A stretch of DNA of 64,000 nucleotides from Botryllus schlosseri (taxonomy: Eukaryota). Under the pieces are notes generated by a model, which did no database searches, was not told where the DNA came from, and saw only the letters and a program-made list of their open reading frames with translations. Numbering within the stretch: the stretch's first letter is position 1; every line of letters starts with the position of its first letter. Of this stretch, positions 1,491 to 42,400 are shown one piece after another. A program made the position numbers and the translations under genes. The stretch spans positions 18,600,001 through 18,664,000 of the forward strand of contig CM119374.1 of NCBI GenBank assembly GCA_051294905.1, in the 5' to 3' direction.

Positions 1491-4400
1491 CCCAAGAATA
1501 TACGGTGCCGTCGTTGGCAATAGCCAGAGAGTGGTTTGCCGTGCATCCGCTGATGACTTTCGAAAACTTTACGTCCAGAAGTGCGGAATAGCGATGAGGC
1601 TTAAATAGGTTTCTGCCGACCTTTGCATTCTTTTCTGCAGGAGAAAACATCAGATTTCGATGTGATAACGTCATTGATGCTTATAGCAAATACAAAAAAT
1701 ATCCAAACATCAAGAAATAATTTCTGTGTACTAATTCGGTGCTGACGCGTCTTTATGTAATGAACTCACGATTAGCATAGTAACCTTACCACCGGCAACG
1801 GAAGCGTATCAAAGCAGACACTGCCTTCGTCTTGACTTATTACCCCCTGTCTAATTACACACATGTATAATACATAGCCTGTGACGGTTTGTATACATAT
1901 CCAGTTTGAAAAGAAATTGATTTATTCAGTTTAATCTGATAGTGCTCTTTACTTTCTCAGAATGACAGCTCATTATAATCTACTCCTTGTATATATCTGC
2001 GTCAACTACCTGACATACTACCCAACCATTGTAAGGACTATTCGCTCTCAACCTCCCAATGATCACAGCATTACTTTATGTATGTTAACTACAGCTTGTT
2101 GACTGATTATAATGAATATGCAAGCACCTAACATGCAGGATTTATTCAGGGATTCTTACAAAACATTGATTCACAGACACTCAGACAGGTGCCAGAACAC
2201 ACATTCTGTAACATCACACCACATCAGTATTGTTTTGAGACACGAAAACATATAAACAGAACATTTTCATTCATAGGTCAAATTATGCGCGAAGTTTGAG
2301 TAGCTGGTCTTTCTACAACCATTTGTGTTATAACGTCTTCCATTGAATTACTCCCGGCATGCCTCACATCACTAATTGTTCTGCAAAAATACGAAATAAC
2401 AAATTCTGATGGTGCTGGCACATGTGACACATTGATCAGAGATGACTGCACTTTTACTGAAGAAAACATTTCACTTCATAAGATATGAAATACATACACA
2501 AAACAGGCACTTGTGCTGATTAAACTGCTGAGCTATAAGTAGTGCAGTAGGCCCTATATGAATAAAAGGTCATCAAAGAGTAGCGTCAAACGAAGCAGTT
2601 TGCCTGAAACGATTTCAAGTCCATGAAGAGTTCTCTTACTGTGAGGATCAATCAGTAAACCTCTTCAAGAAGTGACTTGAAAAACCTATTCTTCCCCACA
2701 CCTGCACACAACAGCACGCATGTCGCCCATAAATCCTCTCCATGAGGCATCTATTTGCGAGTAAAACCACTTGGCAGTAACATGAAATAGAGTGGCAAGG
2801 TAAAAAAAGGTATAGAAACGATTGCTTAACGGTCAATCTTATCGATTCTTAGGTTTCAACTAAATGCATTCATGGTTTAACAACATATATAAAGCTGCTT
2901 TTCAAGTGACAACATTTGCGTTGTAAAAGAATCGGATCGATTTTGCACCGTACTTGACAAAAATATGATTTAACGCAATTGGAGGAAATGCAATGGTCTT
3001 TTGACAAAAGAAAAAACAATAAAATTCAAAGATCTACTCATATGTAAGGCACATTTTTCCATTAGTACCGAAGAAGTTGCTTCAGTTCAGATATGAAACT
3101 ATAATTGTATAATATATAAAGAAACACAACATAACGTCGTGGGAAATTATAGCACTTGAAAACGGTTAGATTTGAGCGCGTACTCAATTTCATTAATGCG
3201 ATCCTTCTCTATTGGGTCGCAGAACATGCCGCGATACTCTGACTTAGAACGAAACATGATCCATATCAATATCAACAAGTTGAAGATCTGTTTCCAAAGC
3301 AGGCAAATTTTCATACCAAAATCTTTTGCGATTTGGGAAAATATAATTTGGATCAAAAAATTCAGCAAAGTCACCATTTTCATGACACGTTATCACACTG
3401 ACATCCCGCGACGATCCATTAAACGCTATTTCAAGTCAACCATGTAAGATCAGATGTCATCACAGTTCAGCGCTACCGACAGAGCGCTCCAGTCACGTAT
3501 TCGATATTACGTGCCAAAGCGCTGGACCTTGTCAGCTCGTAAAATTTGCGTTCGCCATTCTGCGCGACTGCAACTGTTGCGTTTTCAACTCGTAGTAAAT
3601 CCGTTGCTGCTTCGCGGCAAGAAACTGCTCGCCGGCGACTTTCATTTGCATCTCAATCAATTCCATCTGTCTACTCAAAAGTGATTCTTGCCCGTGATTA
3701 TCGAGTCCCATACTAGAACTGCAATATTCGTGAGAAAGCGAGCGTCTCGACGAGTTCGCACTCTGCGGTATCGGCATTTCACAATTCGTTTGGTGGCTGA
3801 AAATTGATTCGCGTTCTGCTGGTTCAAAACGGGCGTCGGTAATCTCATTCAGACTAGCGACAGACGCCAGCGTCGGTGGCTGGTTTTTCACATGTTCGTT
3901 CATATAAGACTCCTCTATTCCTGTATCGTCTGCCGAAAACGAGGTTGCGCTCAAAGGCGCACGAGGCGATGGTAGGTGCAGTGCCTTTTGAGATGGCGGT
4001 AACGGTGCCTTGCTGGACTTTTCTAAAATGAAAAGCGGTCGTTGGTGCCAAGTCGATATTAGCGTAGTCAGGCACTAGCGAGTGACAAAGCAGAATGTAA
4101 AAACTATCTTGGCCAAATCGCGAATACCAGCTACTTTCAACCAAATCGCAACACATGCAATGAACATATCAATTACGTTAAATTCAGTGAGCGTTTATCG
4201 AGGTACAACATAAACAGGTATTCAGAAAACATTTCTATTGTGCCCCGATCGGTATCGACAAACCAAGCAGTAACTGAGGTTTTGAGATTCGCAAATCAAG
4301 CCAGATCTTTGCAAAAAGAGCGTAAGCTTCACATCCTCACGGTTTTTCTATGTGATGCATCTCAACTTTTGTTATATCAGTGAAATATTTCTTTCTTCAG

Positions 4401-9886: not shown

Positions 9887-12200
9887 TTTCCCTCAATTTG
9901 TAGGATACGCAATATATTGAGCTAACGTCCAAACTGCCAAAACAGTACCGATATGATATGTATCGTTTTACCTGCCTAATCAATAATTAGGTAATTTCCG
10001 CGAGAATATCTACTACAGCTCGGGCGAAACAAAAACCTTCTCTCAATAAATACCTCAAAACATTATCAAATACCGCCGCCTATGGCTAACATATGCAGGA
10101 CAAAAAGCCCGCGTTTGTCCATTGAGCTATGTAATACAGAGATAGGCTGCAGGTAGCTGCGTTGTGATCGTACGTGGAGTTTGAGCTTTTCTAATGCTTT
10201 TATACTGATGGACGGGTAGAATTTGTTCAAAGCACTATTCAAACGAATGGTTCGCGGGGCCGATTATGTAACTCCTGCTCGAGTTTGACAGTTCTATCTA
10301 GGTCCCTCATCGTTACCATCTAGGATGGAAGCAGCAGGTCGTCAATTCAAAAATCAGCAGAATCCACTGAGCCGAATATCAAATATCAACATAAGATTCG
10401 ATGCACATTTAAAAAAGACGGACAAGAGAAGAGGTCAGTTGATATTGTTATCCACGCCGGGAAACGAATTACAGATTTCGTCGTTTCGCCGCAATAAGAG
10501 TGGCAACTTATACGGCGCCACTATACCTGCTTGTCACTGAACTCGATACAAACATTAAGCATGTGAACATGAACGAATTTCATTTAATCCTCACAATTTT
10601 CTGGCAGTCGCAAGGGGCACCTTATCATTACCACGGCGTCGTAACACAAAGAAAAAAAACCGTTGATGGAAGAGAGAGAGAGAGGCACAGAATATTCATT
10701 TGTGAACCATGCAAATCAATAACATACATGACAAAATGCAATTGGGCGAACCCAGGACCGAAATTGCCGCACCCCAAACCCAGTGGGGGGGGGGTGGTGA
10801 GCTCGAAGGAGGCCCGAAATTATTCCATGAATTAACACAAATTATAGAGTATTTTTATGAAAATTTATGCAACTTTGTCAATTTATTTTTCGTGCAACAC
10901 GCTATATAACGTCTCCAAATATGTTACAGGGATATCCCTGATATGCTATTTACTGGGTACCCCCCACGCACACAGGAAAAATACGCATTATTCATAGAAA
11001 CGGTCATTCAGACGTCGGCCATGACCGCGCCACGACGTATGAAGTTTTAGGCCATGTAACATGCGACTCCGAGAAGTGTGCCAGAGCGATCGGCAGCAAG
11101 AAAAGTTTGGCGGAAAAGAACTACCCTTATGCTGACCTTTCGATATATCTAATATACATACATGTTTAATTGTCCATAGGCGCCTTTATGTTCATGTCCT
11201 GGCAATATGAAGCATACAAGACAAGTGCCACCGCGCAGAGAATAATTATTAGCCATCAGTGAAGAAATAGCAATTTGAAATCGTATGTGTCTTTTAGTCT
11301 AGTACGTTTGGGCGATTTCAATATCTCTTGACGGAGCAGACATGAGGTCACCACATACCATCCTCCAATACGTCCATTGCATCGCACTGTACTGCGTCTT
11401 TGAGGGCATAAAAATTACAGAACCGCCGATTTAGCCTACTGATTGAACTGCTCTCAGAATATGGGCTTGGAAGAGCTTCAAAAATGTAAAAACACCAAGA
11501 TTGAACGCTCTTGTATCGGTTACGAATTGATGGAACACCTTATTTCGGTTCGACTCCTATCTGTTCATAAGATAGCATTCTGTCTTGAGCGGATGATTGC
11601 GATTCTACTCTTGCTCTCCTGTTCCCGTTGCTGCTGGGTATTACTAGAAACTAGCCCTGCTTCATCCCAGGTACCAGAGATCGCGAGATTCAGCGCATGG
11701 CCCATCACCCACACAAGCCAAAAAGCGACATTTCAATTTCATTTTGGCCTCTGTTCAAGCATTTTTTCGTTGATCATCTTGTTAAGACACTCAAAAAGTA
11801 CGTAGGACGCGACAACATCAAATAAGTATGCCAAACACTGTACTTCGGAAGGTGTGATTCTAACGGCTCATTACAAAACGAAATCACAGGCTAATTTTCA
11901 TGAATTCAGAAAGGGTATTTGTGTATCAAATAATAGAATGACTTTATAACGCATTCGTTACTCAAAAATACCACGTATTGGCGGTTATATGACAGCTCCG
12001 AGATGTCTGATACCCGATGGGAAAAATATCATCAATCGTCGACAAACTATACAGAAAAATTCATAGATTCGAAAAGAAAATAGAAAAAACAAGGCATCTG
12101 GCAGGTATTGTTTTGAACATTGCACTTCATCGCATAGAAACTCAATAATACATGAACGGTACAAAGTCGAGAAATATCGAAATGAAAGGAGATTCATTCA

Positions 12201-15200
12201 TCAAGAGTTGACGGCGTTCTCCGGCGTACTTCGAGCTGGGTCTGTGAAACAGAAACGTTGAAATGAAACTTGTTAGGGTTCGATACACAGAGCAGAAGAG
12301 CCGGTGATGAAAAACACGGTTTGACAAGTTGGTAAATAGTGTAGGAATAGAGATTTTTAAAAAATGGTGTCAAGCTCATCAGTCAACAGCTATCATTTTT
12401 ATTGTTGGATAGACACAAGATATCATATTAACTAAATATTGAGCATAGCTGTTCATAAGCACACGCAGAAGTAATGCTGTAAATATCTACTGATTTTCGA
12501 GTATCAGTACCAATTTCCGAGCCATGCCATAACTACTTCAAGTAAATGTAGGAAATGAATGTGCCGAACATTCGTCAGTAGCTTAAAAATGTAGTTTCGA
12601 TCAAGAATTTGTATACTTTAAGCAGTCGATCAGAGGTGGACTGTATTGGAAACCGAAACTAAATGAAAATGTCTATAACGACACTACAAAATATTGCAAT
12701 TTTGGAAAATGCATTCAGTCACCATATCACTGGGACTATTTTTAATTACTTCACTCAATAAAGTGAAGCAAATCTACCAACCTACCAAAAACTATAATCC
12801 TCATTGCAAAAACCAAAGTGTGAATACTAAGTAGTTTTGCATCGTTAACTGTCGAAACATCATTAGTAAGGAATGGAAGTTAACGAGACGTACTCAAGTA
12901 CTGGGAAAAGAGTAGAAGTAGTTTACTTCCTTATTGATAACCCTCTACTCACAAAACCAACCAAATCACGGAGTGTTCGAAGTTCCACGAGTAATTTCAA
13001 CTACCAGTGGTACATCAAAAGGCACTTGATGTATCACTACGATTCCTACCTACCTATTTGCTTGAAGTTATCACCATATACGGCGGCAGCCACTACTCCA
13101 ATTACGCATACGGCAGGAATCACCCAGCCCATCACGTATACGAAGAATTGCACACAGAGATTACAATGGCAGCTGTAAAATTATATGCAAAAGGTAATTG
13201 TGAAGGCAGTCATAATATCACACCAAATCTGTATAGTTCGATTCCAATCAACTCGCAAAGAAGTTCTCTCATTTGGGAATATTTCATACAAAGAAAGATG
13301 AAGGGGGATCGAATACATTCCAAGACGAGTCTAGGAGATTCTGGTTACATACATAGCATGGAACCATAGTTTATCAAATGAATTTTCTGATTGGTGTTAG
13401 AGATATGAATTTAGCATTTTAGAAAAACGACATTCACAGTCCATCAGACCAACGAAGCTGCTAGGGCTCCAGAACGATGGCAGAACCAGCATAAAATTGG
13501 GTCAGGAATCATTTGATTATGTCAAAATTACTAGCTTCATGCAAATATCTTTCAAACAAAGAATTATTATCGAAATATTGGGCTCCACACTATCACACAT
13601 ATACATGATTTTCAGATTGACACGTCACACAGAGTCAACACGTAACCTGACCAGGACCTTTTCTTGTACATAGAATCCACATTATCATGAAAAAAATGGC
13701 GATAACCATGCAAGAGCTGATACCGCAGCCCACGACGAATTTGAAGAAGCCTGCACATTTATTGCAGTAACAGCTGTAATAGACGTATCATTTAAGCTGG
13801 TGCCTCCGTAACAGGAATTCCACTATTGTTGGCTGTGGGTAAATATTGCGGCTGATATTGAATTGGAGCCACAAATAACTGTTGCATGTGATGTTAAACA
13901 ATCACAAAGTATCATTTGGAACAACAGCACTTACGCAACCATTACCGGGTAATAAAAGACTTAACTCTGATACAGTCACGGAGTCGCTAAAACATTTCCG
14001 ACAAGTGAGTTGTAAAACGCTATATGATAGAGAATCGTGTTTAACTGCGGGGCAAGACCATTCACTTCATCAAAGTCCCATTCATGACAGGAATTCTGAG
14101 AACCACAATATTAGGCTCAGGAATTCATGCAATCGAAATCTGGACTCGGAAAATCCAAGTCTCTGATGTATCTGACTGCAAAAATATATATTCAGCAAAC
14201 AACACTGTCTAATTCATTTTTAAAGAATGTGTCTTCAATGGAGACAGTCAAATCTAAGCACCAAAACAAAAAGTGTTTCCATTGGCAATGGCAGGTATTG
14301 AAACTGAACTTTTACTGGTCAGCCTCCATTCGTAATCGAACATACAGGTACGGTACATACGAATCTAGCATCAGCATAAAATGTATACTTACACACAAGG
14401 GTTCAGATTCTGGATAACTGCGATTGCAATGCCGTTCGACACTTTATCCGTGAGGCTCATCGAGCCATACACGAAGGCACCAGTCTCCTTAACAGAAAGA
14501 CCCACTGGTAAACTGGCCGTGAATTGGGGAAGATTCAGAGGTTTTTTCTTGTAGAATGACTCAAATCATGATGAATAAAATAAATGTCTGGTTTTGACTT
14601 CACTGAAGATTGAACCAAAAATTTCGATGTGCAGACATGTAGTCTACCGCCTGATGTATAGTCAGTAGTCACAGAAACAACGAGGGACAGACGGGACAGC
14701 TTAAATTCAGAACGGAAGTTGTCAATTTCTGACAAGAAGATTAATCTCATGGACAAACTCTGACAAAATTTACTAGGTTTAATTTCAACAAATTTTTTAT
14801 TTATGATCTGCCGATAATAATCGACTTTCAAACAGATCCAATTTCATAAATGTTTTTAAAAACATTTTCTCTTTGCTTTATGTGGAAGTGGAGGTTAGAA
14901 ATACACAAATAACGACATTATTCAATAGTGCCAGAGTACACAAGAATAAATTCGAACTTCGTCCCATGATATGAGATTTGTGAAGCCTCAAATGTTGCTC
15001 CCACCATATTGGTTCATATCTAATCTTCTCTCTCTACAGGTTTAAATATAAAATAGAGGTAGTGGCATCCGACATGCCAGAGGTAGCAATATGAGGCTAT
15101 GTCAAGGCCGTGGAGTTTGGTATGGCTCAAATCGTGATAACAAATACCATACACAAGAATTTCATCAGAATCATTAACAACACCGGCACGTATATTGTAG

Positions 15201-18200
15201 TGTAGCTTGATAGTATCAATACATTGGATGAAGCAAATTCATTCCTAAACTCGATATGAAAGCAGATGGCGTAAACATGTGGTCAGCAACCTGTGACCCA
15301 CAAAAAAAGATGAATATTTGTGTTTTTGAAGAGCGGCAGGCTATGCAAAAAAAATCATTTTGAAACCGTTTCGCAGAGCAATAACGACGCCTGATTTACA
15401 TAACATATATCAGGGGTGGGCAGACCTGCTTCATGTGCGAGCCACATATCAAAAATCTTACCTTTAAAAGAGCCACAACACAAAAATACGAATTTATGAC
15501 GTCACGATGGAGTGTAGGCTATCGAATGAAGTTTATTATTGTGTGGTGATATGGTGCGTCTCCACCTAAGCTGCAAGGTGTTTGAAATCGATCGTGACCT
15601 GCGCTGGTGTAATCAATTATCAAGTTCATTGTTGAACACAATGATTTGTCATTGATTGATGACCAGGCATCTATTGTTGCTGGTGAAACGTTTATGTAAG
15701 CTCGATTCGAGAGTTCAATTGCGAATTTCCAACCCTGTAGTGCCACCTACCCCTAAATCTTACAAGTCTTGCGTAAACCATAAGGAAAGAAACAACACGA
15801 AAATAATATGCATATTGTTAATATGCGATAAAATGCATCAATTTATTGTCACGATAAACCTGTCTAACAAAATGATGAAACACATTTGGAATCATTAAAG
15901 AGTCGCAGTCAAAGGTGGAAAGAGTCGCAGTTTGCCCACGCCTGACACATATTGTAGTACAGCACGGTAACAATACATTAGTGATTGGAATCATTCCTCA
16001 ACTTGATTTGAAATATCTGTATTCTTATTAGACGGCTTAAATAACAAAAAGCGGCAACCTCCCGGTACCAAGTTTCAGACAGGAAAAACATACCAAGCAT
16101 TACTTACAGTGTTATCACCGACCATCTCAGACAGCATCGAAAGGCACATGACCAGTATGATGGTGGTTCCCAAGCCCAACAGTATCGCCAGGAAGTAGAT
16201 GCTAATCTCACTGGTCGCATCGTTTTCGGTCAGGAAATGAGACCACGTGCAAGAGGCTAGCACGAGAACGCCGCCGATCACGTAAATAAACTGCAAATGA
16301 TGTAATGAGTCAATACAGTTCAAGACAACATTCTATTTTCGGTCTGGTGCCAAATCCATTTACAGTGACATGACAAATGCCGCAACACAAATCACATGGG
16401 CGAACTTTATAGTAGGCCGGCAGATCAGGTTTCAAATTTTCTTTCAACCGCAGGGTTCATCAGGTGACTGATAGCCGAGTACAATGCTGTTGCGGGAAAA
16501 AATACGCAGAACGGAATCTGTGACTCAATCACATGTTCAAGTCAAAATAGGTGGGGAAATGCAAGGTTAGCGTATCTAGTTGCACCTAGCACCATGCCGC
16601 TTGATCATGGGATATTTTGATAATTGCAAATTCATGCTCTCTCTAACATGACACAGCATCATTTACAATTCAACTTGGTGGTTACAGGTTAGTGAATGAC
16701 TGCAGCGTGATGGATTTGTAAATAAAATCTATAAAATTGATTTTACTTCACAAGTACTGGTCAGAGATTGTATTCAAGCTATCTAGTGACACTACTGCTA
16801 CATATTTTGCCAATTTACACCAGCTTTACAATATATTTGTGAGCAAATAATATGGCCGATGTTGGGCGATACTTTCAAGGATTGCTGTGGACTAAAGAGG
16901 AGACAGTTTCAAAGAAGAAATGATAACACCAGCAAAGATTTAGCAAGAGGAAAAATGGCGCTGCTAAAATCAGAATTACAGCCCGACCAATGTATCAGGC
17001 CGATACGTTTATCTATAAAATTATTGCTCTCGGCCAATTCCAGTCGCTATTCATCAACCTGTACAGTGGTACAAGAACATCATCACTCTTGCAATTCTTC
17101 CACGTGACTGTTAGATTGATTTACGAGGACCATAGCGTCCATTGCTTGGTGAAAATGCTAAAAAGTTATGTTTCCTGAACTACAATATGCGTCTGTTGAA
17201 CTACACATACTAATTACTTACGAACCTAAAGCAGTGTAGCAAATGAATAAAGTTTATGTGAAATATAACTTCAAATTACAGCCACTAACTACAAGTTCAG
17301 TTGAAATATATCATATTTTCATATCAACAGAATATACGGACATTATTAGCAGAAATATGTTGTATGGGGGGCATTGGTCGGACTCAAGGGGCTTACTTTA
17401 ATGCAATTACTCATTTACATCACATACTTTGTTCATGAAACTCAAAACCCTTGAAATACAGTACATGTGTATTGTGCACAAGGGAACTTTAAGGTCATAT
17501 TCATTTAATTTTGATCAATTTCAATCTTACTATGTATCAATAGTTTGTGCAAACTCTCAAATTTGGAGTCAGAACCGATGTAGGCCCGACGCATTACCTT
17601 ACTTGCTGGCAGCTGCAGCAACACAAACCACGTTGCCCAAACATTACCTACCTCATTCCTCAACACTTTTGTCAGAGGTCTTGTCACAATCGTCGCACAA
17701 AAGCCTGACACAAAGACTATCAGCGGAATAATCGCGATATACTGCTTGTCAAGTTTCAATGTGTCAGTCAGGTACATCGGCAAGTACACTTGCGACAGAT
17801 TCACCACCAATCGTGTGCACATATACAGCAAGCCCATCTGAAAGAGTGACGAGTTGTCATGAGCAACTGACACTCGGCAGGAAATAGAATACTTCTTGGT
17901 ATACGTATTCATTGCAGCATTTGAAATATGCCAATTGTCTAGTGAGAAAATAACTCATTAAAGGAAATGCATACATCAATTTCACTTTATCGGTGAGCCT
18001 TACCATTATTATTATAATCATATATCCTTGCTGCGTATTAGCATTGATATTGTTTGAAAAAGTCGGTGCTTAACCAGCTTACACAGCAATAATTGGTTCA
18101 CGTGTGTCACATCAAAATGGAATGCATCCGGTACTGAAGGTTATTATTATGCTGCATGGGACTGTCACAAGTTTACGATGCCAAACATCACATGCTGCCC

Positions 18201-21200
18201 TGTGAGCATCAGGAGTAAACAGTGCACAGCAAACACTTCGCAGTCCTATCCTTAATCTGCATTATGGTAGTCTTACTACAGAGCTTCGTAAATAATGGAC
18301 ATTTTGACACACAGACAAGGTATTTGAAGGAAGCCTACTCACGATTCCCAAATCTAGAGTACAAGCCAAAACGGGAAGACAATGTGGATGAGAAAATACA
18401 ATGTCAAGTTTCAGTTAACACTAGGCAATGGAGGTTATTTACTGCTTCATTCTTTCTAACTTTTCCGTACGGACAGCACAATCTTAGTGTAGATGTACTA
18501 GCACTAATATCTCACTTTCATATCAAAACCAATGTAAAAGGTCATGTCCATATCATGACACTTCACATCACCGCAGGGTACGAAACTTGAGACCAACAGA
18601 TAATTACTAGTTACTATGCCTATCAAGATTTGACTAAAAACACAGGGTACCAAGAAATTACAATCATTCAATATCGAGTTTCGTATTGAACACGAAAACT
18701 ATCTATGACTAAAAACGGCATTACTTCCGTAAACACAAGCAATAATAGCCCTACTATATCAAGCGAAAATGAGTAAACGGGCCACATAATATAAATGAAA
18801 ATTTCACCTGGTAAAACTCTTTCTTTCGAAACCAATCAGACGATTTCATCAGCCTTACTTCGCAAATAACTTCTAAAATACAACACAACACTATTAAATG
18901 AAGACAGAGCGGACGAGAAAGAGCATATTTTGGTGGTGACATATTGGTACAAACGAGTTCAGCACACCAAAACAGAACCACAAAAATCCACTCAATCGGT
19001 TATGACACCACAAAACAATCAATAAAAATTATGTAAAATATTGTCAGCCAAACAATCTTCGTTACAGTATACAAACTTTGATCTCATCATGATTTGATGG
19101 ATGAGGAATTTGATTCGACTTTAGAAGTAGAAGTAGCGATTACCAAGGTATATCAAAACTAAATTTGAGTCGCAGTACAAAATGAGAGGTGCCCAAGACA
19201 GTAGTTTCAGAACGTAGACGTCAAGACTTCGAATATTATTAGTATGACTTGCGAACTTGAAAGATTCTTCATAGTCGGTAACACAAAGTGACTTGAATGA
19301 CAATGTAAATGGGCGCACTTTTCTAAAGTATATACAGTTGCCAAGACACAGGGGGTGTTTCAGTCGGTCATCGTGACAATTGCACTAAGAAATAAAAACC
19401 TATTCGCTTTACAAAAGCAACATGAAAAAATTCAAGTAGGCCTAATCTTGTTTTAAAGACTGTTATGTAGAAGTGATCGCAGTCTAAAAACATGTACACT
19501 TGATTAAGTGGTGCAAGAAGGAAATTATGGTAGCCGAATATAATACTCCGAAAAAGCATAAGTATTTCATCACTGACGACCTCTGCAATTACCTGATGCC
19601 GATGATGCCACGCTTTCCGATCCGAGCAGACGCGTCTTTTCGTCAGGGACATCGACTACGGCGGTGACAGAATCATTCCGTTCCGAGTCTCCACGCTGCA
19701 GCCCTGAGTGACTGTCCACAAACCTTTGCTCGATCTCATGTTCCTTGACGCCGAAATGGAACATCGCGGAAAACACAGCGCCCGTTGCCACCACGATTAA
19801 AGCGATGTCCTGAAATTTGATGAACTTATAGGCTGTGGAAGCCGCTTCATGTTTTTCAACAAATGTGGCAGGCTACGAAACTGTGACGTGATATATGTAG
19901 GCCTGGGCGCAGGCTTAATATCTTAGGACACTTAGGCCATGGTTGAGTGATGTGTAGAAATTTAATTACCTCCCCCACTGTCACTTATTTGCCTGACCTC
20001 CTGACAACAGTAGCGTGGTTCAAAGTTAACAGCATGCAAAATACGACAAAGGTAACAGTATTCGTCAATGGAGATAGATTTCATCATATAAATATGTCTC
20101 TCTGGGATTTGTGTTCGTCTCAGACCTCAAGACTACGAAATCTAATATCTACATGGAAATTACGCATCCGACTAACTTCGGAAGTCACATTTCGTCACAG
20201 GTATTGTACTGTATTCTTATTATCCTTGAATCAGAGTAGGTTTCCTGATATGTGAAAAAAGTTTGGGGGAATGACCTTGAGATCAAGGCACATCGAACCA
20301 TATTCAGGATACCACACTAATATGCTACTATGCTCACTATAACTTATGCTACTGCATATCAATATTAAATTATACGACTTCACCTTCAAAAGTATGAAAC
20401 GAAAGTACAAAATCTACAAATGGTTGGGATGAGAAGGTTACTGGCGTGTACCTACAAACCGATACCACAAGAGGACCAGTCTATATACAAGCAACTAATC
20501 AGAATTTCAGACCGTGATCAATTCGAAGACGCAAGTCTCTGCGTGCTCACCCGGAACTCTGTCAAATCGTTTTCCGATAGTTGTTGAGCATCTTCTCCGC
20601 TAAATTTGAACACCAAAAACGTCGTGACGTACACCAAGATGTTGCTCAAAACAGTGAAGGCGTATCTGAAAGTATAGAACACTCAATTTCAATCTAGTAG
20701 GCTTAATCATATTTTCATTCATTGCGCTTCGCACAAATTAGTGGACAAGAGAGCATACGCAAGAAAATGGGTAACACAAGAAGTCGATTCACACGGGATA
20801 TAATATGAGATTTAGAATACGCTACATCAGAAGTATAATAAAAAATGCTGGAGAATCTGATAGATTGTTATTTTCATGGAAGTTCCCTTCGATTAAGCTT
20901 CAGTAATTGTTAAGATGAGGGAAGCAGTGCTGAGCATTCACAAGAATACTTGTTAAGCAATGCTTACAGGATACAAGGGTAGCCTATTACATCCCCCAAT
21001 GAAAATATGGAGCGAAAACAAGCTTCACATGATCAAATACACCGATAAGCAACGGACTTCAACTAGAGATGGGTAAAGTAAACACTCATCAAACCTTATT
21101 GAATTGAGATTGACTTTTTCCGCGCGATTTCTTGCCAATTCCGGGATCAGAGCTAGATGATTGATTTGCGTGGCGGCCCAGCCGCATTGAAATATGACTA

Positions 21201-22026
21201 CTAACGGCACGTAATAAATAAACTGCGCATACTCTGGAGTGTCTTTATTGCAACCGATACATCGCATGAACAGTGACGGGAAAGATAAAGCGACGGCTAT
21301 TGTTCCTGGAAAAATAAGAAATTTATGCAGAAATGACGAATATTTAGGATACATCCGATTCAAAGTTGGATGTCACTTTCGGCATTTGTTCGGTATGCCT
21401 GCCTGTTCGGGTTTCGAATACCGGTATCAACCCTCATAGGGCTAGAGCCGTGACACCAATTTCTGTCCAGAGAGCTGACATCTTTAACTGCCGGGTTAAC
21501 GTCTCCTACATTGCTTTAATCTCTGTGGGAGTTGGCCTATAGGAAGAGCTCATCGATTCACCTTATATAACAGGTGAGCAGTGATGATTCTCCAAGTTTA
21601 AGTAATTTAATGAAAAATAATAAAAAATGAAGCATTGTGTGAGCACAGGACACCGATTCCATACAGGTCGATTCATAATTCAACAAATATTTCAAAAGCC
21701 TACCTAATAAATGCCATGATTTCCTCCGTCCATAGCCGCATATATTTCCTCTCCTATCTGATTCATAGCCAACAAGTGGTGTGGCGATGCCGTCTGCTAT
21801 TTGTCCGACAAGAAGAACATAGCCTGCTGTTGCGTTAGAAAAATCCAAAACCTTGAAGTGAAAAACAGAATTTATTCGATTATAGTGTTACTCCATGGCT
21901 AAAATATAAACTGCACAGTACCTTATGAAAAAATAAGAGAAGGTAACTAAACCACATCGACGCACATAAATCATTGAGAACATGACCCACGCCGTACGAG
22001 AATCTCGTCGAAAACGAAAGAGTCAT
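12201..22026 (-). CDS. MFSD12: MFSD12-like major facilitator superfamily transporter, 11-exon CDS (~493-494 aa) with two alternative copies of exon 10
   Basis: Exons 22026-21922, 21851-21704, 21305-21095, 20665-20551, 19809-19593, 18872-18808, 17837-17652, 16290-16108, 14487-14393, [13773-13658 or 13172-13054], 12241-12201. All GT-AG and phase-consistent (1485 nt using 10b). Motifs [74 protein letters not shown] and [17 protein letters not shown] match MFSD12. The final 41-nt exon is less certain. Confidence 0.92.
13054..13172 (-). CDS. MFSD12: MFSD12 alternative exon 10b (last TM helix, version B)
   Basis: Acceptor ataattttacag|C; encodes (V)[39 protein letters not shown]; donor G|gtaggt. 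Confidence 0.8.
13658..13773 (-). CDS. MFSD12: MFSD12 alternative exon 10a (last TM helix, version A)
   Basis: Acceptor gtctattacag|C; encodes (V)[38 protein letters not shown]. The donor (G|gtcctg) is weak; read-through gives GPGQVTC* with the stop at 13635. Confidence 0.75.
15411..15944. mobile_element. hAT-type MITE
   Basis: TIRs CAGGGGTGGGCAGAC / CAGGCGTGGGCAAAC; near-perfect 8-bp TSD acatatat / acacatat. Confidence 0.75.
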
Positions 22027-33400: not shown

Positions 33401-36400
33401 CAAGTAGAAGTAGTTCAAATCCCAATACGAAAGATAGCCCGAGGAATTTCAGGGCTGTTTTTACAGAGTACCAACATTTAATAGTCATAAAAGTCAAGTA
33501 AAGCCTGAAAATTTTGTTGCGCTTCGTGCACAGTAGTTATGTAGTGACAAATATGTTTTCACAGAAGTATCAGTGAATATAATTTAGGTACCGGATTGCT
33601 TGGTTCCGCTCACTCCGCATTGTTGCCCATATCAAATATTTCATCACAGTAAGTATGGCACACCATAACGTTTGAAACTACTGTTTCGCAATCTAGCAAT
33701 TACCTATCATATCGTAATCTAGCAGCCCATGACGTGTCCTGCTAATCTGGAAAATCCGGCTTTTTTGAACGTTACACATGTTGTAGCAGATCACCTTTGA
33801 AGCTTTATGGACAAAAGACGGCTTATATTTTCCGCTTTTTGTAAGTGGTATTTGTGTTTCATTTTCAATTCCGAGTATCATGCTTTGAGTTCTGATTATA
33901 CTTTCAGTTCTTTTGTCTACATAACATACATGTTGAAGCATAAAAGAGAGTATAGTAATGCCTCTATTTTCCGAAAATAAAACTACACTAAATCTAAATT
34001 TTACGATCCACAATATTTGCTATTAACATATACTAATCGTGCAAAGTGTTGAAACCGTATCCGATACAACTTCTCCGTATTTCTCTTCGCCTAAACTTGA
34101 GGCCTTATAATATGGGGTGGGGCGCCACGCGAGGATATTCTCTAAAACGGGGTCTTCTAGTAAACAAAGGATTAGTATCGCATTTCATATCAATACTATA
34201 ATTTCCATCCCATGATGCGAAAGAATGCTTATTCTGTAGAAAATTGTTACCTCCTGCGATGCATCAATACCAATCAAGCTCTCTGCAACTTCCGCATAGC
34301 TCAATTTGGAGCTTTTGACAGTCCATGCGAACGAATTCAGACTGTGTTCAAAACTACTTACTTACTTGAGTAGATTTAAAGTAAGTCAATTCTACTTCTA
34401 CTTCAAGTAGTTTTAGGTGGCTAACGGAATAAGTACTTCTACTCGTACTTGAGTAGATTTTTTCGTTGCTACTTCTACTTTTACTTGAGTAGCTTTCATG
34501 ACTACTTTGACCACCTCTGCCTGTCACACACATGAGTTAAAACTTGAAATGTAGAGAAACCATCACCGTCCCCGAACGATGCGGAAATCGAAAGAGCAAA
34601 TAGGACCAAACCCCTCAGTGAAACTACAATGAGCTCGGTCAATAATGTTGCATAAAATGAATGCATAATATTTATTGTCCACTTACATCCAAAGATAAAG
34701 AGCTTTTCATTTATAACACTGGGCAAAAATTTCGAACGAAAAATTTGTTGACTTTCATTCGCACTCGATCTAGCCTGATTTTGGCACGCTGATTCCAAAA
34801 ATGCCACTGGTTTTCTTCTATCACGTCAACTTTTTGCTCTACGACATATGCCTAAAATATGCAAATTTTCATGAATTTAGCCATATTACTTTTCCACATC
34901 ATATAAAAAATCCATACTATTACCATATAATAAGTTATATAGTCAAGGGCTCGATTGAATTATGTAGGAAAAAGGTACTGGTATCGATCTAGGCCGATAC
35001 TTTCACCCATTTTTGGTTACAGGATGCAATCATCCGAGGATATTTGACACATATATTTGATGCAAACTGCAGGATATGGCAAGAAAAATGAACATGACAT
35101 TTGCTATCAGCTACAGGTCCAATGCCCCATTCAGCTTATCCAGTGTAACCTGAAACTCCTATACGCTCGACAATTTGGATCAAGATGAAGGTCTTAGGGA
35201 TAGCAGGCCAAATGATGAAGATTTTGAAATCGAAGTTGATTCAGAACGTAGAGTAGTCGTTCAACACGAGTTATTGATGTGACATAAGCTTTGGGACTTG
35301 GAATAGAAATCTTCAGAAGTTTTAACATCCTTATGAAGTGAGAAAAGAATACTTGAACATTGAATTGAACATTGAATTATTGTAATATCAAGAACACGAT
35401 TGGATCATGAGTCAGCTTTGAAATATTGTGTTTTCTAGTGGTCAGACAATAAGGATACACATACCGTAACCCTGATACACATGTGTCACTTCCATATGTT
35501 TATGTCGGACAGCAGAAATTCAAAAAAGCTAAAAATCTAAATAATTTCCATAAAAACCTGGACATAGTAAGAGATGGACAAGGAGAAAATGTTCCCCAAC
35601 ATATGAAGATGATGGGGGTAAGATAACAGAGTAGATTGGAGCTAATATATGTTAGCTGACTATTGCTCGAGTATCAAACTAGAAAACCTACAGAATTACA
35701 CGTCATTAGCGTAAATTTGGACCCTGAAACTCGTACTTTATTTGTCATGTAGAAGCAAAAAAACGGAAATCATTTTTGAATTCAGCGCCCAAAAGTTAGT
35801 CCAAATCAATTACCTGATCAAAGTCAACAAAAATAGTGTCGACCAGTGTAATCAATGTGTTAATTACCTGGTTCTATAGGTGCAGGCATTTCCGTTCCAT
35901 TGAAAATATGATGAGGGGTACTCAAAGTAGAATAACCCGAAGCTGTTTCTGCTGATCCTGTTTGTAGTGGAATAGTTGATCCTCCAACTCCAGATGTAAC
36001 AGTTGTTACTCCACCTACGGGTGCCGTGGCCGATCCTTCAACTCCAGTTGTGACTCTACCTACAGGAACAGTGGCTGATCCTCCAATTGCAGGCGTGACA
36101 GTTGATACTCCACCTACAGGCGCAGTGGCTGATCCCCCAACAGGACCAGTCGCGGTTCCTCCAATGGCGGGCGTGACAGTTGATACTCCACCTACAGGCG
36201 CAGTGGCTGAACCCCCAACAGGACCAGTGGCTGTTTTTCCAATTGCAGGCGTGACAGTTGATACTCCACCTACAGGCGCGGTGGCTGATCCCCCAACAGG
36301 ACCAGTGGCTGTTCCTCCAATTGCAGGCGTGACAGTTGATACTCCACCTACAGGTGCCGTGGCTGATACCCCAACAGGACCAGTGGCTGTTTCTCCAATT

Positions 36401-39400
36401 GCAGGCGTGACAGTTGATACTCCACCTACAGGCGCCGTGGCTGATCCCCCAACAGGACCAGTCGCTGCTCCTCCAATGATGGGCGTGACAGTTGATACTC
36501 CACCTACAGGCGCCGTGGCTGATCCCCCAACAGGACCAGTCGCTGTCCCTCCAATTGCAGACGTGACAGTTGATACTCCACCTACAGGCGCAGTAGCTGA
36601 TCCCCCAACAGGACCAGTCGCTGTTCCTCCAATGATGGGCGTGACAGTTGATACTCCACCTACAGGCGCAGTGGCTGATCCCCCAACAGGGCCAGTCGCT
36701 GTTCCTCCAATTGCAGACGTGACAGTTGATACTCCACCTACAGGCGCAGTAGCTGATCCCCCAACAGGACCAGTCGCTGTTCCTCCAATGATGGGCGTGA
36801 CAGTTGATACTCCACCTACAGGCGCAGTGGCTGATCCCCCAACAGGACCAGTCGCTGTTCCTCCAATTGCAGACGTGAGAGTTGATACTCCACCTACAGG
36901 CGCAGTAGCTGATCCCCCAACAGGACCAGTCGCTGTTCCTCCAATGATGGGCGTGACAGTTGATACTCCACCTACAGGCGCAGTGGCTGATCCCCCAACA
37001 GGACCAGTCGCTGTCCCTCCAATTGCAGACGTGACAGTTGATACTCCACCTACAGGCGCAGTAGCTGATCCCCCAACAGGACCAGTCGCTGTTCCTCCAA
37101 TGATGGGCGTGACAGTTGACACTCCACCTACAGGCGCAGTGGCTGATCCCCCAACAGGACCAGTCGCTGTTCCTCCAATTGCAGACGTGAGAGTTGATAC
37201 TCCACCTACAGGTGCAGTGGCTGATCCCCCAACAGGAGCAGTCGCTGTTCCTCCAATGATGGGCGTGACAGTTGATACTCCACCTACAGGCGCAGTGGCT
37301 GATTCCCCAACAGGACCAGTCGCTGTTCCTCCAATTGCAGACGTGACAGTTGATACTCCACCTACAGGCGCAGTGGCTGATTCCCCAACAGGACCAGTCG
37401 CTGTTCCTCCAATTGCAGACGTGACAGTTGATACTCCACCTACAGGCGCAGTAGCTGATCCCCCAACAGGACCAGTCGCTGTTCCTCCAATTGCAGACGT
37501 GACAGTTGATACTCCACCTACAGGCGCAGTAGCTGATCCCCCAACAGGACCAGTCGCTGTTCCTCCAATGATGGGCGTGACAGTTGATACTCCACCTACA
37601 GGCGCAGTGGCTGATTCCCCAACAGGGCCAGTCGCTGTTCCTCCAATTGCAGACGTGACAGTTGATACTCCACCTACGGGCGCAGTGGCTGATTCCCCAA
37701 CAGTGCCAGTCGCTGTTCCTCCAATTGCAGACGTGACAGTTGATACTCCACCTACAGGCGCAGTGGCTGATTCCCAAACAGGACCAGTCGCTGTTCCTCC
37801 AATTGCAGACGTGACAGTTGATACTCCACCTACGGGCGCAGTGGCTGATTCCCCAACAGTGCCAGTCGCTGTTCCTCCAATTGCAGACGTGACAGTTGAT
37901 ACTCCACCTACAGGCGCAGTGGCTGATCCCCCAACAGGACCAGTCGCTGTTCCTCCAATGATGGGCGTGACAGTTGATACTCCACCTACAGGTGCCGTGG
38001 CTGATCCCCCAACAGGACCAGTCGCTGTTCCTCCAATGATGGGCGTGACAGTTGATACTCCTCCTACAGGCGCCGTGGCTGATCCCCCAACAGGACCAGT
38101 CGCTGTTCCTCCAATGATGGGCGTGACAGTTGATACTCCACCTACAGGTGCCGTGGCTGATCCCCCAACAGGACCAGTCGCTGTTCCTCCAATGATGGGC
38201 GTGACAGTTGATACTCCTCCTACAGGCGCCGTGGCTGATCCCCCAACAGGACCAGTCGCTGTTCCTTCAATGATGGGCGTGACAGTTGATACTCCACCTA
38301 CAGGCGCCGTGGCTGATCCCCCAACAGGACCAGTCGCTGTTCCTCCAATGATGGGCGTGACAGTTGATACTCTACCTACAGGCGCCGTGGCTGATCCCCC
38401 AACAGGACCAGTCGCTGTTCCTCCAATTGCAGACGTGACAGTTGATACTCCACCTACAGGCGCAGTAGCTGAACCCCCAACAGAACCAGTCGCTGTTCCT
38501 CCAATAATGGACGTGACAGTTGATGCTCCACCTACAGGCGCAGTGGCTGATCCCCCAACAGGACCAGTCGCTGTTCCTCCAATTGCAGACGTGACAGTTG
38601 ATACTCCACCTACAGGCGCAGTAGCTGATCCCCTAACAGGACCAGTCGCTGTTCCTCCAATGATGGGCGTGACAGTTGATACTCCACCTACAGGCGCAGT
38701 GGCTGATCCCCCAACAGGACCAGTCGCTGTTCCTCCAATTGCAGACGTGACAGTTGATACTCCAGCTACAGGCGCAGTAGCTGATCCCCCAACAGGACCA
38801 GTCGCTGTTCCTCCAATGAAGGGGGTGACAGTTGATACTCCACCTACAGGCGCAGTGGCTGATCCCCCAACAGGACCAGTCGCTGTTCCTCCAATTGCAG
38901 ACGTGACAGTTGATACTCCACCTACAGGCGCAGTAGCTGATCCCCCAACAGGACCAGTCGCTGTTCCTCCAATGATGGGCGTGACAGTTGATACTCCACC
39001 TACAGGCGCCGTGGCTGATCCCCCAACAGGACCAGTCGCTGTTTCTTCAATGATGGGCGTCACAGTTGATACTCCACCTACGGGCGCCGTGGCTGATCCC
39101 CCAACAGGACCAGTCGCTGTTCCTCCAATTGCAGACGTGACAGTTGATACTCCACCTACAGGCGCCGTGGCTGATCCCCCAACAGGACCAGTCGCTGATC
39201 CTCCAATTGCAGACGTGACAGTTGATACTCCACCTACAGGCGCCGTGGCTGATCCCCCAACAGGACCAGTCGCTGTTCCTCCAATGATGGGCGCGACAGT
39301 TGATACTTCACCTACAGGCGCCGTGGCTGATCCCCCAACAGGACCAGTCGCTGTTCCTTCAATGATGGGCGTGACAGTTGATACTCCACCTACAGGCGCC

Positions 39401-42400
39401 GTGGCTGATCCCCCAACAGGACCAGTCGCTGTTCCTCCGATTGCAGACGTGACAGTTGATACTCCACCTACAGGCGCAGTAGGTGAACCCCCAACAGGAC
39501 CAGTCGCTGTTCCTCCAATAATGAGCGTGACAGTTGATGCTCCACCTACAGGCGCAGTGGCTGATCCCCCAACAGGACCAGTCGCTGTTCCGCCAATTGC
39601 AGACGTGACAGTTGATACTCCACCTACAGGCGCAGTAGCTGATCCCCCAACAGGACCCGTCGCTGGTCCTCCAATGATGGGCGTGACAGTTGATACTCCA
39701 CCTACAGGCGCAGTGGCTGATCCCCCAACAGGACCAGTCGCTGTTCCTCCAATTGCAGACGTGACAGTTGATACTCCACCTACAGGTGCAGTGGCTGATC
39801 CCCCAACAGGAGCAGTCGCTGTTCCTCCAATGATGGGCGTGACAGTTGATACGCCACCTACAGGCGCAGTGGCTGATTCCCCAACAGGACCAGTGGCTGA
39901 TCCTCCAATTGCAGACGTGACAGTTGATACTCCAACTACAGACGTGACAGTTGATACTCCACCTACAGGCGCAGTGGCTGATCCCCCAACAGGACCAGTG
40001 GCTGATCCTCCAATTGCAGACGTGACGGTTGATACTCCACCTACAGGAGCCGTGGCTGATCCCCAAACAGGACCAGTCGCTGTTCCTCCAATGATGGGCT
40101 TGACAGTTGATACTCCACCTACAGGCGCCGTGGCTGATCCCCCAACAGGACCAGTCGCTGTTCCTCCAATGATGGGCGTGACAGTTGATACTCCACCTAC
40201 AGGCGCCGTGGCTGATCCCCCAACAGGACCAGTCGCTGTTCCTTCAATGATGGGCGTGACAGTTGATACTCCACCTACAGGCGCCGTGGCTGATCCCCCA
40301 ACAGGACCAGTCGCTGTTCCTCCAATGAAGGGCGTGACAGTTGATACTCCACCTACAGGCGCAGTGGCTGATCCCCCTACAGGACCAGTCGCTGTTCCTC
40401 CAATTGCAGACGTGACAGTTGATACTCCACCTACAGGCGCAGTAGCTGATCCCCCAACAGCACCAGTCGCTGTTCCTCCAATGATGGGCCTGACAGTTGA
40501 TACTCCACCTACAGGAGCCGTGGCTGATCCCCCAACAGGACCAGTCGCTGTTCCTTCAATGATGGGCGTGACAGTTGATACTCCACCTACAGGAGCCGTG
40601 GCTGATCCCCCAACAGGACCAGTCGCTGCTCCCCCAATGATGGGCGTGACAGTTGATACTCCACCTACAGGCGCCGTGGCTGATCCCCCAACAGGACCAG
40701 TCGTTGTTCCTCCAATTGCAGACGTGACAGTTGATACTCCACCTACAGGCGCAGTAGCTGATCCCCCAACAGGACCAGTCGCTGTTCCTCCAATGATGGG
40801 CCTGACAGTTGATACTCCACCTACAGGAGCCGTGGCTGATCCCCCAACAGGACCAGTCGCTGTTCCTTCAATGATGGGCGTGACAGTTGATACTCCACCT
40901 ACAGGAGCCGTGGCTGATCCCCCAACAGGACCAGTCGCTGTTCCCCCAATGATGGGCGTGACAGTTGATACTCCACCTACAGGCGCCGTGGCTGATCCCC
41001 CAACAGGACCAGTCGCTGTTCCTCCAATTGCAGACGTGACAGTTGATACTCCACCTACAGGCGCCGTGGCTGATCCCCCAACAGGACCAGTCGCTGTTCC
41101 TCCAATGATGGGCGCGACAGTTGATACTTCACCTACAGGCGCCGTGGCTGATCCCCCAACAGGACCAGTCGCTGTTCCTTCAATGAAGGGCGTGACAGTT
41201 GATACTCCTCCTACAGGCGCAGTGGCTGATCCCCCAACAGGACCAGTCGCTGTTCCTCCAATTGCAGACGTGACAGTTGATACTCCACCTACAGGCGCAG
41301 TAGTTGATCCCCCAACAGGACCAGTCGCTGTTCCTCCAATAATGGGCGTGAGAGTTGATGCTCCACCTACAGGCGCAGTGGCTGATCCCCCAACAGGACC
41401 AGTCGCTGTTCCTCCAATGATGGGCGTGACAGTTGATACTCCACCTACAGGCGCCGTGGCTGATCCCCCAACAGGACCAGTCGCTGTTCCTTCAATGATG
41501 GGCGTGACAGTTGATACTCCACCTACAGGCGCCGTGGCTGATCCCCCAACAGGACCAGTCGCTGTTCCTCCAATGATGGGCGTGACAGTTGATACTCCAC
41601 CTACAGGCGCCGTGGCTGATTCCCCAACAGGACCAGTCGCTGTTCCTCCAATTGCAGACGTGACAGTTGATACTCCACCTACAGGCGCCGTGGCTGATCC
41701 CCCAACAGGACCAGTCGCTGTTCCTCCAATGATGGGCGCGACAGTTGATACTTCACCTACAGGCGCCGTGGCTGATCCCCCAACAGGACCAGTCGCTGTT
41801 CCTTCAATGAAGGGCGTGACTGTTGATACTCCACCTAGAGGCGCCGTGGCTGATCCCCCAACAGGACCAGTCGCTGTTCTTCCAATGACGGGCGTGACAG
41901 TTGATACTCCACCTACTGGCGCAGTAGCTGATTCCCCAACAGGACCAGTCGCTGTTCCTCCAATGATGGGCGTGACAGTTGATACTCCACCTACAGGCGC
42001 AGTAGCTGATCCCCCAACAGGACCAGTCGCTGTTCCTCCAGTGATGGGCGTGACAGTTGATACTCCACCTACAGGCGCAGTGGCTGATCCCCCAACAGGA
42101 CCAGTGGCTGATCCTCCAATTGCAGACGTGACAGTTGATACTCCCCCTACAGGCGCCGTGGCTGATCCTCCGATTGCAGGCGTGACAGTTGATACGCTAC
42201 CTACGGGTGCAGTGGCTGATCCTCCAAGTCCTGGTGTGACAGTTAATTCTCTACTTATAAATGGAATCGTTGATCCTCCAGCAATACCTACAAGGGGTGT
42301 TGAAGTAGGTCCTGTATATTCAATCAATTCGGCTTGAGCATCCCCTTCTCCCGGATTTACTATTCCGCCCCCGAGAATTCCTGTGACTGTTGATATTCCA

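What the first reader, a model, noticed from the sequence alone, without database searches (positions are those of the whole stretch)
13054..13773. Tandemly duplicated, frame-incompatible last-TM exon in MFSD12: candidate mutually exclusive splicing
Seen: two homologous exons follow exon 9, 10a (116 nt, [15 protein letters not shown]-hydrophobic-RK) and 10b (119 nt, [15 protein letters not shown]-hydrophobic-KQI). Both have a tacag|C acceptor, enter in phase 2 and exit in phase 1, so including both frameshifts. Both keep the CxCxxC loop and a TM helix but are otherwise highly diverged, implying old duplication under selection. Known: MFSD12 imports cysteine into lysosomes and melanosomes. Inference: the isoforms swap TM12 and the start of the cytosolic tail, possibly changing organelle targeting or transport. 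I know of no description of this. 10a may instead be an alternative terminal exon ending GPGQVTC*.
Basis: partly seen in the sequence, partly recalled or inferred. Interest (0 to 1): 0.75.

Follow-up and report, generated by a model that had tools for sequence, protein, structure and literature searches.

The report
Spare last-helix exon in ascidian MFSD12
A sea-squirt copy of the lysosomal cysteine-importer gene MFSD12 carries two versions of the exon for its last membrane helix; every RNA sample examined uses only the second, yet the first has stayed intact in at least three species, so it is probably a rarely used alternative exon, though its use is unproven.

Summary
On the minus strand, exon 9 of a single-copy MFSD12 orthologue (a stolidobranch-type ascidian; closest named relative Styela clava) is followed by two homologous exons. 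These are 10a (13773-13658, 116 nt) and 10b (13172-13054, 119 nt). Both are open and have the same phase. Joining them shifts the frame and gives a stop 15 codons into 10b.

RNA does not show mutually exclusive use. In two raw RNA-seq runs and two transcript assemblies, the only junctions seen are 9>10b and 10b>11. No read crosses either 10a splice site as a spliced read. Eight mRNA-like runs lack 10a words.

Comparative data argue against a dead relic. S. clava and a third ascidian (Logan contig from SRR10746997) each have an extra last-helix exon copy in intron 9. In both it lies upstream of the used exon, is open, has length 2 mod 3, encodes a helix-grade hydrophobic stretch and is bounded by AG/GT. 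The introns of these species cannot be aligned. The two foreign copies are reciprocal best hits, in the coding frame only (z about 11).

Verdict: 10b is the default exon. 10a is most likely a minor or conditional alternative exon (about 0.45). An unused relic is the main rival (about 0.33). It would be a new member of a known kind, of moderate interest.

The parts
11750..22026 (-). MFSD12 orthologue, 11 coding exons plus the spare exon 10a; the 3' end is approximate
   Evidence: tblastn of S. clava X1/X2 and Logan transcripts P0001, P0151, P0152 covers exons from 22026 to 13058. RNA depth runs down to about 11750-11830. Pfam MFS_2 hits on exons 2 and 3.
14393..14486 (-). Exon 9 (end of TM11 and the ...QNLNPC loop), constitutive
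   Evidence: Junctions 16107>14486 and 14393>13172 appear in reads and contigs. It is 97% identical to S. clava.
13658..13773 (-). Exon 10a: spare copy of the CxCxxC loop plus TM12 exon. It is 116 nt and open, with a weak donor (GTCCTG) and a thin polypyrimidine tract.
   Evidence: No spliced read touches it, and depth is 0 over 13738-13904 in all four runs.
13173..13657 (-). Intron between 10a and 10b (485 nt), too long for steric exclusion and without a poly(A) signal
   Evidence: Only about 1x unspliced reads in the bulk RNA run.
13054..13172 (-). Exon 10b: the used TM12 exon, 119 nt, strong donor (GTAGGT), carries the stolidobranch VMGW motif
   Evidence: Junctions 14393>13172 and 13054>12241 occur in X23, X21, X10 and X14. 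Contigs X10 record 1 and X14 record 7 read 8-9-10b-11. It is the best match to the orthologues' exon.
12201..12241 (-). Coding part of exon 11 ([13 protein letters not shown], then stop), shared by both possible isoforms
11750..12200 (-). 3' UTR (extent judged from RNA depth)
   Evidence: Depth table and single-cell read ends near 11830.

Best explanation
The region holds two tandem, homologous versions of the penultimate coding exon of MFSD12. This exon encodes the Cys-rich loop after TM11, the last transmembrane helix (TM12) and the first residues of the C-terminal tail. Exon 10b is the default and is spliced into essentially all mRNA sampled (shown). Exon 10a is an old duplicate kept as a translatable, phase-compatible exon that still encodes a helix. 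It is most likely a genuine but minor or condition- or cell-type-restricted alternative exon used instead of 10b (inferred). Exclusivity would be enforced by reading frame, not by sterics. Both lengths are 2 mod 3, so including both gives a premature stop in 10b about 74 nt before the last junction, which should trigger nonsense-mediated decay. Skipping both also changes the frame. The weak 10a donor and acceptor would explain why it is skipped by default and would need an activator to be used (inferred).
For: 1) The anatomy is confirmed.

2) Styela clava (L004) has, between exon 9 (ends 13738) and its used TM12 exon (14898-15034, 137 nt), a second copy at 14543-14685. This copy is 143 nt, has acceptor ttgttacag|C and donor CAG|gtgtta, is open, and has length 2 mod 3.

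3) A third ascidian (L006, SRR10746997) has exon 9 at 2931-3025 and its used exon at 3781-3911 (131 nt). A further copy lies at 3371-3495: 125 nt, AG/GT-bounded, open, length 2 mod 3.

4) Between all three species only exons align at the DNA level and introns do not, so neutral sites are saturated. Even so, the S. clava and L006 spare copies align ungapped over 36 residues (score 71, z about 11). This holds only in the coding frame; other frames give z of 2.1 or less.

5) The two spare copies are reciprocal best hits across whole loci, ahead of the canonical exon, and share a one-residue insertion in the Cys loop.

6) The L006 spare copy's best hit in the window gene is 10a (rank 1 of 2772 windows).

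7) All three spare copies have 0 stops in frame and 1-3 in the other frames, and a helix-grade hydrophobic core (Kyte-Doolittle 2.0-2.6) followed by basic residues.

8) From a stop frequency of about 0.066 per codon at this base composition (my own hand estimate, not a tool output), staying open by chance is about 4-7% per copy.

9) Frame-enforced exclusivity is a recognised class of mutually exclusive exons (PMC5740500). Such exon pairs are enriched in membrane transport proteins and are often tissue-specific (PMC9741552).
Against: No spliced read or contig uses 10a in the bulk RNA run X23, the single-cell run X21 or the assemblies X10 and X14. The 5' 36 nt of 10a have zero depth, and the 1-2 reads over its 3' part appear from the bin depths to run unspliced across the donor. 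Power is low: about 14 junction reads for 10b, so roughly 15-20% usage is not excluded.

Eight mRNA-like runs (X7-X14) hold no 10a words. The nine runs that hold them also hold much intron.

RefSeq for S. clava annotates only the canonical isoform and a form truncated after exon 9. Three Logan transcripts from related ascidians carry only the canonical type, and their clusters have no second isoform.

All three spare copies have weak donors. The spare copies evolve faster than the canonical exon (scores 40-71 against 84-131).

Window 10a resembles canonical exons (61-84) more than the other spare copies (40-41). Its orthology to them is therefore unresolved, and it could be a younger, not yet decayed duplicate.

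In L006 the homology extends 7 codons upstream of the only in-phase acceptor, a hint of erosion.
Confidence: 0.45

Rival explanations
1. Unused relic: 10a is a leftover of a tandem exon duplication that the spliceosome ignores. Only 10b functions, and 10a is decaying slowly or is young enough still to look intact.
For: Only 10b is seen in RNA. 10a words are absent from the mRNA-like runs. The donor GTCCTG is weak and the polypyrimidine tract poor. No 10a-type isoform is annotated or assembled in S. clava or three other ascidians. 10a diverges faster. Its N-terminal half is still about 69% identical in DNA to 10b by my own hand count from the alignment, and some similarity shows in a second frame (z 5.9), as expected if that part is younger or was gene-converted. 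My rough hand estimate is about 10% chance of staying open by luck in a young-duplicate scenario.
Against: Three species keep an open, phase-compatible, helix-coding copy at the same place, while introns are saturated. The S. clava and L006 copies are reciprocal best hits with similarity only in the coding frame. A neutral relic of that age should be unrecognisable.
Confidence: 0.33
2. Regulatory poison exon: 10a is occasionally included together with 10b. This gives a frameshifted transcript with a premature stop that is degraded, and so tunes MFSD12 output.
For: Joint inclusion gives a stop 15 codons into 10b, upstream of the last junction. Such transcripts would be rare in steady-state RNA, which fits the absence of reads.
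Against: A poison exon needs conserved splice sites, not a conserved open frame, a hydrophobic helix and basic end, or a length class that allows in-frame replacement. Similarity is frame-specific and at protein level, not DNA level. No 13658>13172 junction was seen.
Confidence: 0.1
3. Alternative terminal exon: 10a is read through its donor to ...GPGQVTC*, and the transcript is polyadenylated within the following intron.
For: The read-through frame closes after 7 codons. In S. clava and L006 it also closes within 1-5 codons.
Against: No AATAAA or ATTAAA in the 485-nt intron. The 3'-biased single-cell run has zero depth from 13237 to 13737, and all its 3' signal is at 11800-12240. A quick stop after a donor is expected by chance in AT-rich introns.
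Confidence: 0.04

Closest known systems
Tandem-duplicated, mutually exclusive exon pairs in membrane transport proteins (the class catalogued in PMC5740500 and PMC9741552; examples named there include SCN-alpha exon 5a/5b, CACNA1 genes and ABCC9/mrp; SLC25A3 exon 3A/3B is from my own knowledge)
   Same: Adjacent homologous exons of similar length and the same phase, encoding the same structural element (a transmembrane helix). Joint inclusion shifts the frame. The pair is conserved in position across species.
   Different: Here only one of the two exons has any splice-junction support, so the defining RNA criterion is unmet. The pair is restricted, as far as seen, to stolidobranch-type ascidians, because Clavelina has a 140-nt intron 9 with no room for a copy.
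Vertebrate MFSD12 (lysosomal and melanosomal cysteine importer; role as stated in PMC12435214's abstract, and from my own knowledge)
   Same: Orthologous 12-helix MFS_2 protein, about 48-50% identical to the S. clava orthologue over its full length. The ...NPC motif at the end of exon 9 and the TM12 layout are shared.
   Different: No alternative TM12 exon has been described for MFSD12. Of the 6 listed papers holding both 'MFSD12' and 'mutually exclusive', none is about such an exon judging by title and abstract (7 papers hit, and the passages themselves were not read), and MFSD12 is absent from both exon catalogues. No MFSD12 structure is in the PDB; only MelB matches, and only the N-terminal half.
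Styela clava MFSD12-like gene (XP_039250507.1 isoform X1, XP_039250508.1 isoform X2)
   Same: Same exon structure, with the spare TM12 exon copy in intron 9 upstream of the used exon.
   Different: The S. clava copy is 143 nt with a CxxCxxC loop and is not annotated. The annotated isoform X2 simply stops after exon 9 (TA|G gives TAG, by intron retention or by 9>11 skipping).

Membership tests
MFSD12 orthologue (MFS_2 family) | Full-length similarity to named MFSD12 proteins | tested here: met
   S. clava MFSD12-like X1/X2 and related transcripts align to every exon from 22026 to 13058. The nearest database proteins are all named MFSD12 or MFSD12-like.
MFSD12 orthologue (MFS_2 family) | Pfam MFS_2 / MFS_1 domain | tested here: inconclusive
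   Single exon ORFs hit PF13347 at 21-22 bits, below the 27-bit cutoff, as expected for fragments. The full-length orthologues carry PF13347 and PF07690. The spliced window protein could not be submitted by reference.
MFSD12 orthologue (MFS_2 family) | Cysteine import into lysosomes or melanosomes | not testable with these tools
   Function is inferred from orthology only.
Mutually exclusive exon pair from tandem exon duplication (criteria of PMC5740500) | Neighbouring exons with significant sequence similarity | tested here: met
   z 5.4-7.3; 0 of 5000 shuffles reach the observed score.
Mutually exclusive exon pair from tandem exon duplication (criteria of PMC5740500) | Same reading frame, similar length, no in-frame stop, GT-AG borders | tested here: met
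   116 and 119 nt, both 2 mod 3, both open, both AG...GT.
Mutually exclusive exon pair from tandem exon duplication (criteria of PMC5740500) | Splice-junction reads from each exon to the flanking exons, bridging the other exon | tested here: not met
   10b has 14393>13172 and 13054>12241 in four runs. 10a has none. Depth was low, and only one read-laying run was allowed.
Mutually exclusive exon pair from tandem exon duplication (criteria of PMC5740500) | No exon-joining reads, or joint inclusion causes a frameshift | tested here: met
   No 13658>13172 joint. Joining gives a premature stop.
Mutually exclusive exon pair from tandem exon duplication (criteria of PMC5740500) | Homologous cluster at the same gene position in other species | tested here: met
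   Spare copies lie in intron 9 of S. clava (L004 14543-14685) and of the SRR10746997 ascidian (L006 3371-3495). Clavelina has none.

The most novel reading that the evidence does not exclude
Stolidobranch ascidians have kept, since before these lineages split, a cell-type- or condition-specific alternative version of the luminal Cys loop and last transmembrane helix of the lysosomal cysteine importer MFSD12. This would give a second transporter isoform whose use is hidden in bulk RNA.
Probability: 0.4. Interest if true: 0.5.

Novelty: new member of a known kind. Interest (0 to 1): 0.38.

Why it matters
If 10a is used, it would be the first alternative-helix isoform reported for MFSD12. MFSD12 is a transporter of interest for lysosomal thiol supply and pigmentation. 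The natural swap would point to TM12 and the preceding Cys-rich loop as tunable parts of the protein. It would also be a lineage-restricted example of a tandem exon duplication retained in tunicates. If 10a is unused, the case is a caution: an exon copy can look conserved and spliceable in three genomes and still lack any transcript support.

Tried and rejected
- Looking up S. clava isoform X2 by exact sequence failed, because only the longest product is on record. This was solved through cluster members.
- DNA-level alignment between species cannot test 10a, because even the functional 10b does not align.
- Inverted repeats that could act as selector or docking RNA structures: three short pairs were found, none flanking 10a, and they look like chance.
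- A word search for exon 10a alone in public runs found nine holders. All belong to studies whose runs also hold much intron, so they say nothing about splicing.
- A PDB search found no MFSD12 structure on which to place the exon.
- The paper search turned up no paper whose title or abstract concerns an MFSD12 alternative TM12 exon.
- Alternative donor 11 nt downstream of 10a (CAG|gttacg): it would give a 127-nt exon in a different phase. Exon 11 stays open in that frame, but the donor is just as weak and has no read support, so it was not pursued.
- More ascidian genomes (Ciona, Phallusia, other styelids) could not be reached.

Full report
**What is there.**
- Exon 9 ends at 14393 with TGT GT|gtaagt.
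- Exon 10a is 13773-13658 (116 nt).
- Exon 10b is 13172-13054 (119 nt).
- Exon 11 begins at 12241 and closes the frame at 12201.

Each of 10a and 10b takes two bases from exon 9 and hands one base to exon 11. Either one alone gives an open product ending ...PENAVNS*. The two together shift the frame and stop 15 codons into 10b. Both peptides begin with a CxCxxC..FF loop and continue with a hydrophobic stretch of transmembrane grade.

The similarity is far above chance: z is 5.4 (global) and 7.3 (local), and none of 5000 shuffles reaches the observed score. The flanking introns share nothing.

The splice signals differ. Exon 10b has a strong donor (TAG|gtaggt) and a good pyrimidine tract. Exon 10a has a weak donor (AAG|gtcctg) and a thin tract.

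**The gene and the organism.** Stop-to-stop ORFs, Pfam MFS_2 hits on exon pieces and tblastn of full-length relatives define an 11-exon MFSD12 orthologue from about 22026 to 11750. It is single-copy in the 495.5 Mb assembly.

The closest proteins are MFSD12-like of the ascidian Styela clava and three unnamed Logan transcripts. Next come Phallusia, Ciona and Clavelina. The window therefore comes from a stolidobranch-type ascidian.

- All four runs show 13054>12241. 14393>13172 shows in X23, X21 and X10, and X14 has the same junction with a one-base variant (listed at 13171).
- Contigs X10 record 1 and X14 record 7 read 8-9-10b-11.
- No joint touches 13773 or 13658.
- Depth over 13738-13904, which includes the first 36 nt of 10a, is zero in every run.
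- The roughly 1x depth in X23 over 13571-13737 continues into the next intronic bin. By my reading of the bin depths this is one or two unspliced reads running across the 10a donor.
- No 14393>12241 or 13658>13172 joint is seen.

Power is modest. There are about 14 junction reads for 10b, so usage of 10a up to roughly 15-20% in these samples cannot be excluded.

A word search with exon 10a alone found nine holders. All are from runs or studies that also hold large intron fractions of the locus, so they are uninformative. The eight runs that look like mature-mRNA assemblies (X7-X14, share 0.05-0.12) do not hold 10a words.

In other species, every available transcript uses the canonical type. 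This covers S. clava isoform X1 and transcripts P0001, P0151 and P0152, and their 90% clusters contain no second C-terminal isoform. S. clava isoform X2 merely stops after exon 9.

**Comparative evidence.** This changes the picture.

In the S. clava genomic locus (L004):
- Exon 9 ends at 13738 and the used TM12 exon is 14898-15034 (137 nt).
- Between them, at 14543-14685, lies a second copy.
- That copy has acceptor ttgttacag|C and donor CAG|gtgtta, is 143 nt, open, and 2 mod 3. It has a Cys loop..FF, a hydrophobic helix and a basic end.

A search with the exon 9 ORF returned one fragment, from an 18-kb Logan DNA contig of another ascidian (L006). In that contig:
- Exon 9 is 2931-3025 and the used exon is 3781-3911 (131 nt).
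- Intron 9 again contains a copy, at 3371-3495.
- That copy is 125 nt, AG/GT-bounded, open, and 2 mod 3.

Clavelina (L005) has only a 140-nt intron 9 and no copy.

**Does this reflect selection?** Between the window, S. clava and L006, only exons align at the DNA level and introns do not. Neutral sites are therefore saturated.
- The S. clava and L006 spare copies align without gaps over 36 residues (score 71, z about 11). This holds only in the coding frame; every other frame combination gives z of 2.1 or less.
- In whole-locus six-frame scans each is the other's top hit, ahead of the canonical exon.
- They share a one-residue insertion in the Cys loop.
- All three spare copies have no stop in frame and 1-3 stops in the other frames.
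- With about 0.066 stops per codon expected at this composition (my own hand estimate), staying open by chance is roughly 4-7% for each copy.

Together these are the marks of long-term constraint on a translated sequence.

**Caveats.**
- Window 10a is more like canonical exons (scores 61-84) than like the other spare copies (40-41).
- Its first third is still about 69% identical in DNA to 10b, by my own hand count from the alignment. It also shows some similarity in a second frame (z 5.9).
- On the other hand, the L006 spare copy's best hit in the window gene is 10a, not 10b.
- The orthology of window 10a with the other two is therefore unresolved. It may be a separate, younger duplicate or partly gene-converted.
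- In L006 the homology extends seven codons upstream of the only in-phase acceptor, which may mean erosion.
- All three spare copies have weak donors and evolve faster than the canonical exon.

**Mechanism.** The best-supported account has these parts:
- Exon 10b is the constitutive TM12 exon (shown).
- Exon 10a is a retained alternative used rarely or in restricted cells (inferred from conservation).
- Exclusivity is enforced by reading frame and nonsense-mediated decay, not by sterics. The intron between the two exons is 485 nt here and 212 nt in S. clava.
- It is also not enforced by an evident RNA selector structure.

Frame-enforced exclusivity is a recognised class of mutually exclusive exons (PMC5740500). 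Tandem-duplicated exon substitutions are enriched in membrane transport proteins and are often tissue-specific (PMC9741552).

By the usual MFS topology (my own knowledge), the loop between TM11 and TM12 faces the lumen and the tail faces the cytosol. A swap would therefore change a luminal Cys-rich loop, TM12 and the juxtamembrane start of the tail. Nothing here tests a change in targeting or transport.

**Rivals.**
- Unused relic (0.33). This fits the RNA data and the weak splice sites, but not the three-species retention.
- Poison exon (0.10). This does not need an open, helix-coding frame.
- Alternative terminal exon (0.04). There is no poly(A) signal and no 3' reads.

**Novelty.** No listed paper holding both 'MFSD12' and 'mutually exclusive' appears, by title or abstract, to concern such an exon. 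MFSD12 is not in the two exon catalogues checked. No MFSD12 structure exists in the PDB copy. The kind of feature is well known. This would be a new, lineage-restricted member of it, and it currently fails the defining RNA criterion.

**Verdict.** Interest is moderate.

Noticed in passing
window 15408-15908 (intron 8 of MFSD12): A roughly 500-nt stretch with RNA reads on both strands. Several short contigs lie on it at high depth (up to 58x) but differ from the window by 6-11 letters and run on into unrelated sequence. It looks like a dispersed repeat or transposon fragment expressed from other copies.
   Followed up: no
window 36001-42000: A sharp GC-rich block (57% against about 39% around it) with negative GC skew. 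Another first-stage note on this window calls it a Gly/Val/Ile-rich PTS-like domain.
   Followed up: no
L004 13730-13745 (Styela clava): RefSeq isoform X2 (441 aa) ends exactly at the end of exon 9. The exon ends in TA, and both the intron (gtaagt) and exon 11 start with G. So intron retention and skipping of the TM12 exon both give TAG and a protein lacking the last helix.
   Followed up: partly
window 11554-11586: A 30-nt island downstream of the MFSD12 3' end, where 10-13 bulk-RNA reads match only this short piece and run off into unrelated sequence on both sides. It is probably a short repeat shared with another transcript.
   Followed up: no
window 14484-14486 and 13171-13172: Some reads and contigs place the exon 9 acceptor 2 nt further in, with TT between, and the 10b start 1 nt in, with T between. 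These look like allelic substitutions at the first exon bases rather than alternative splice sites. The species is highly polymorphic, with many reads only 90-95% alike.
   Followed up: no
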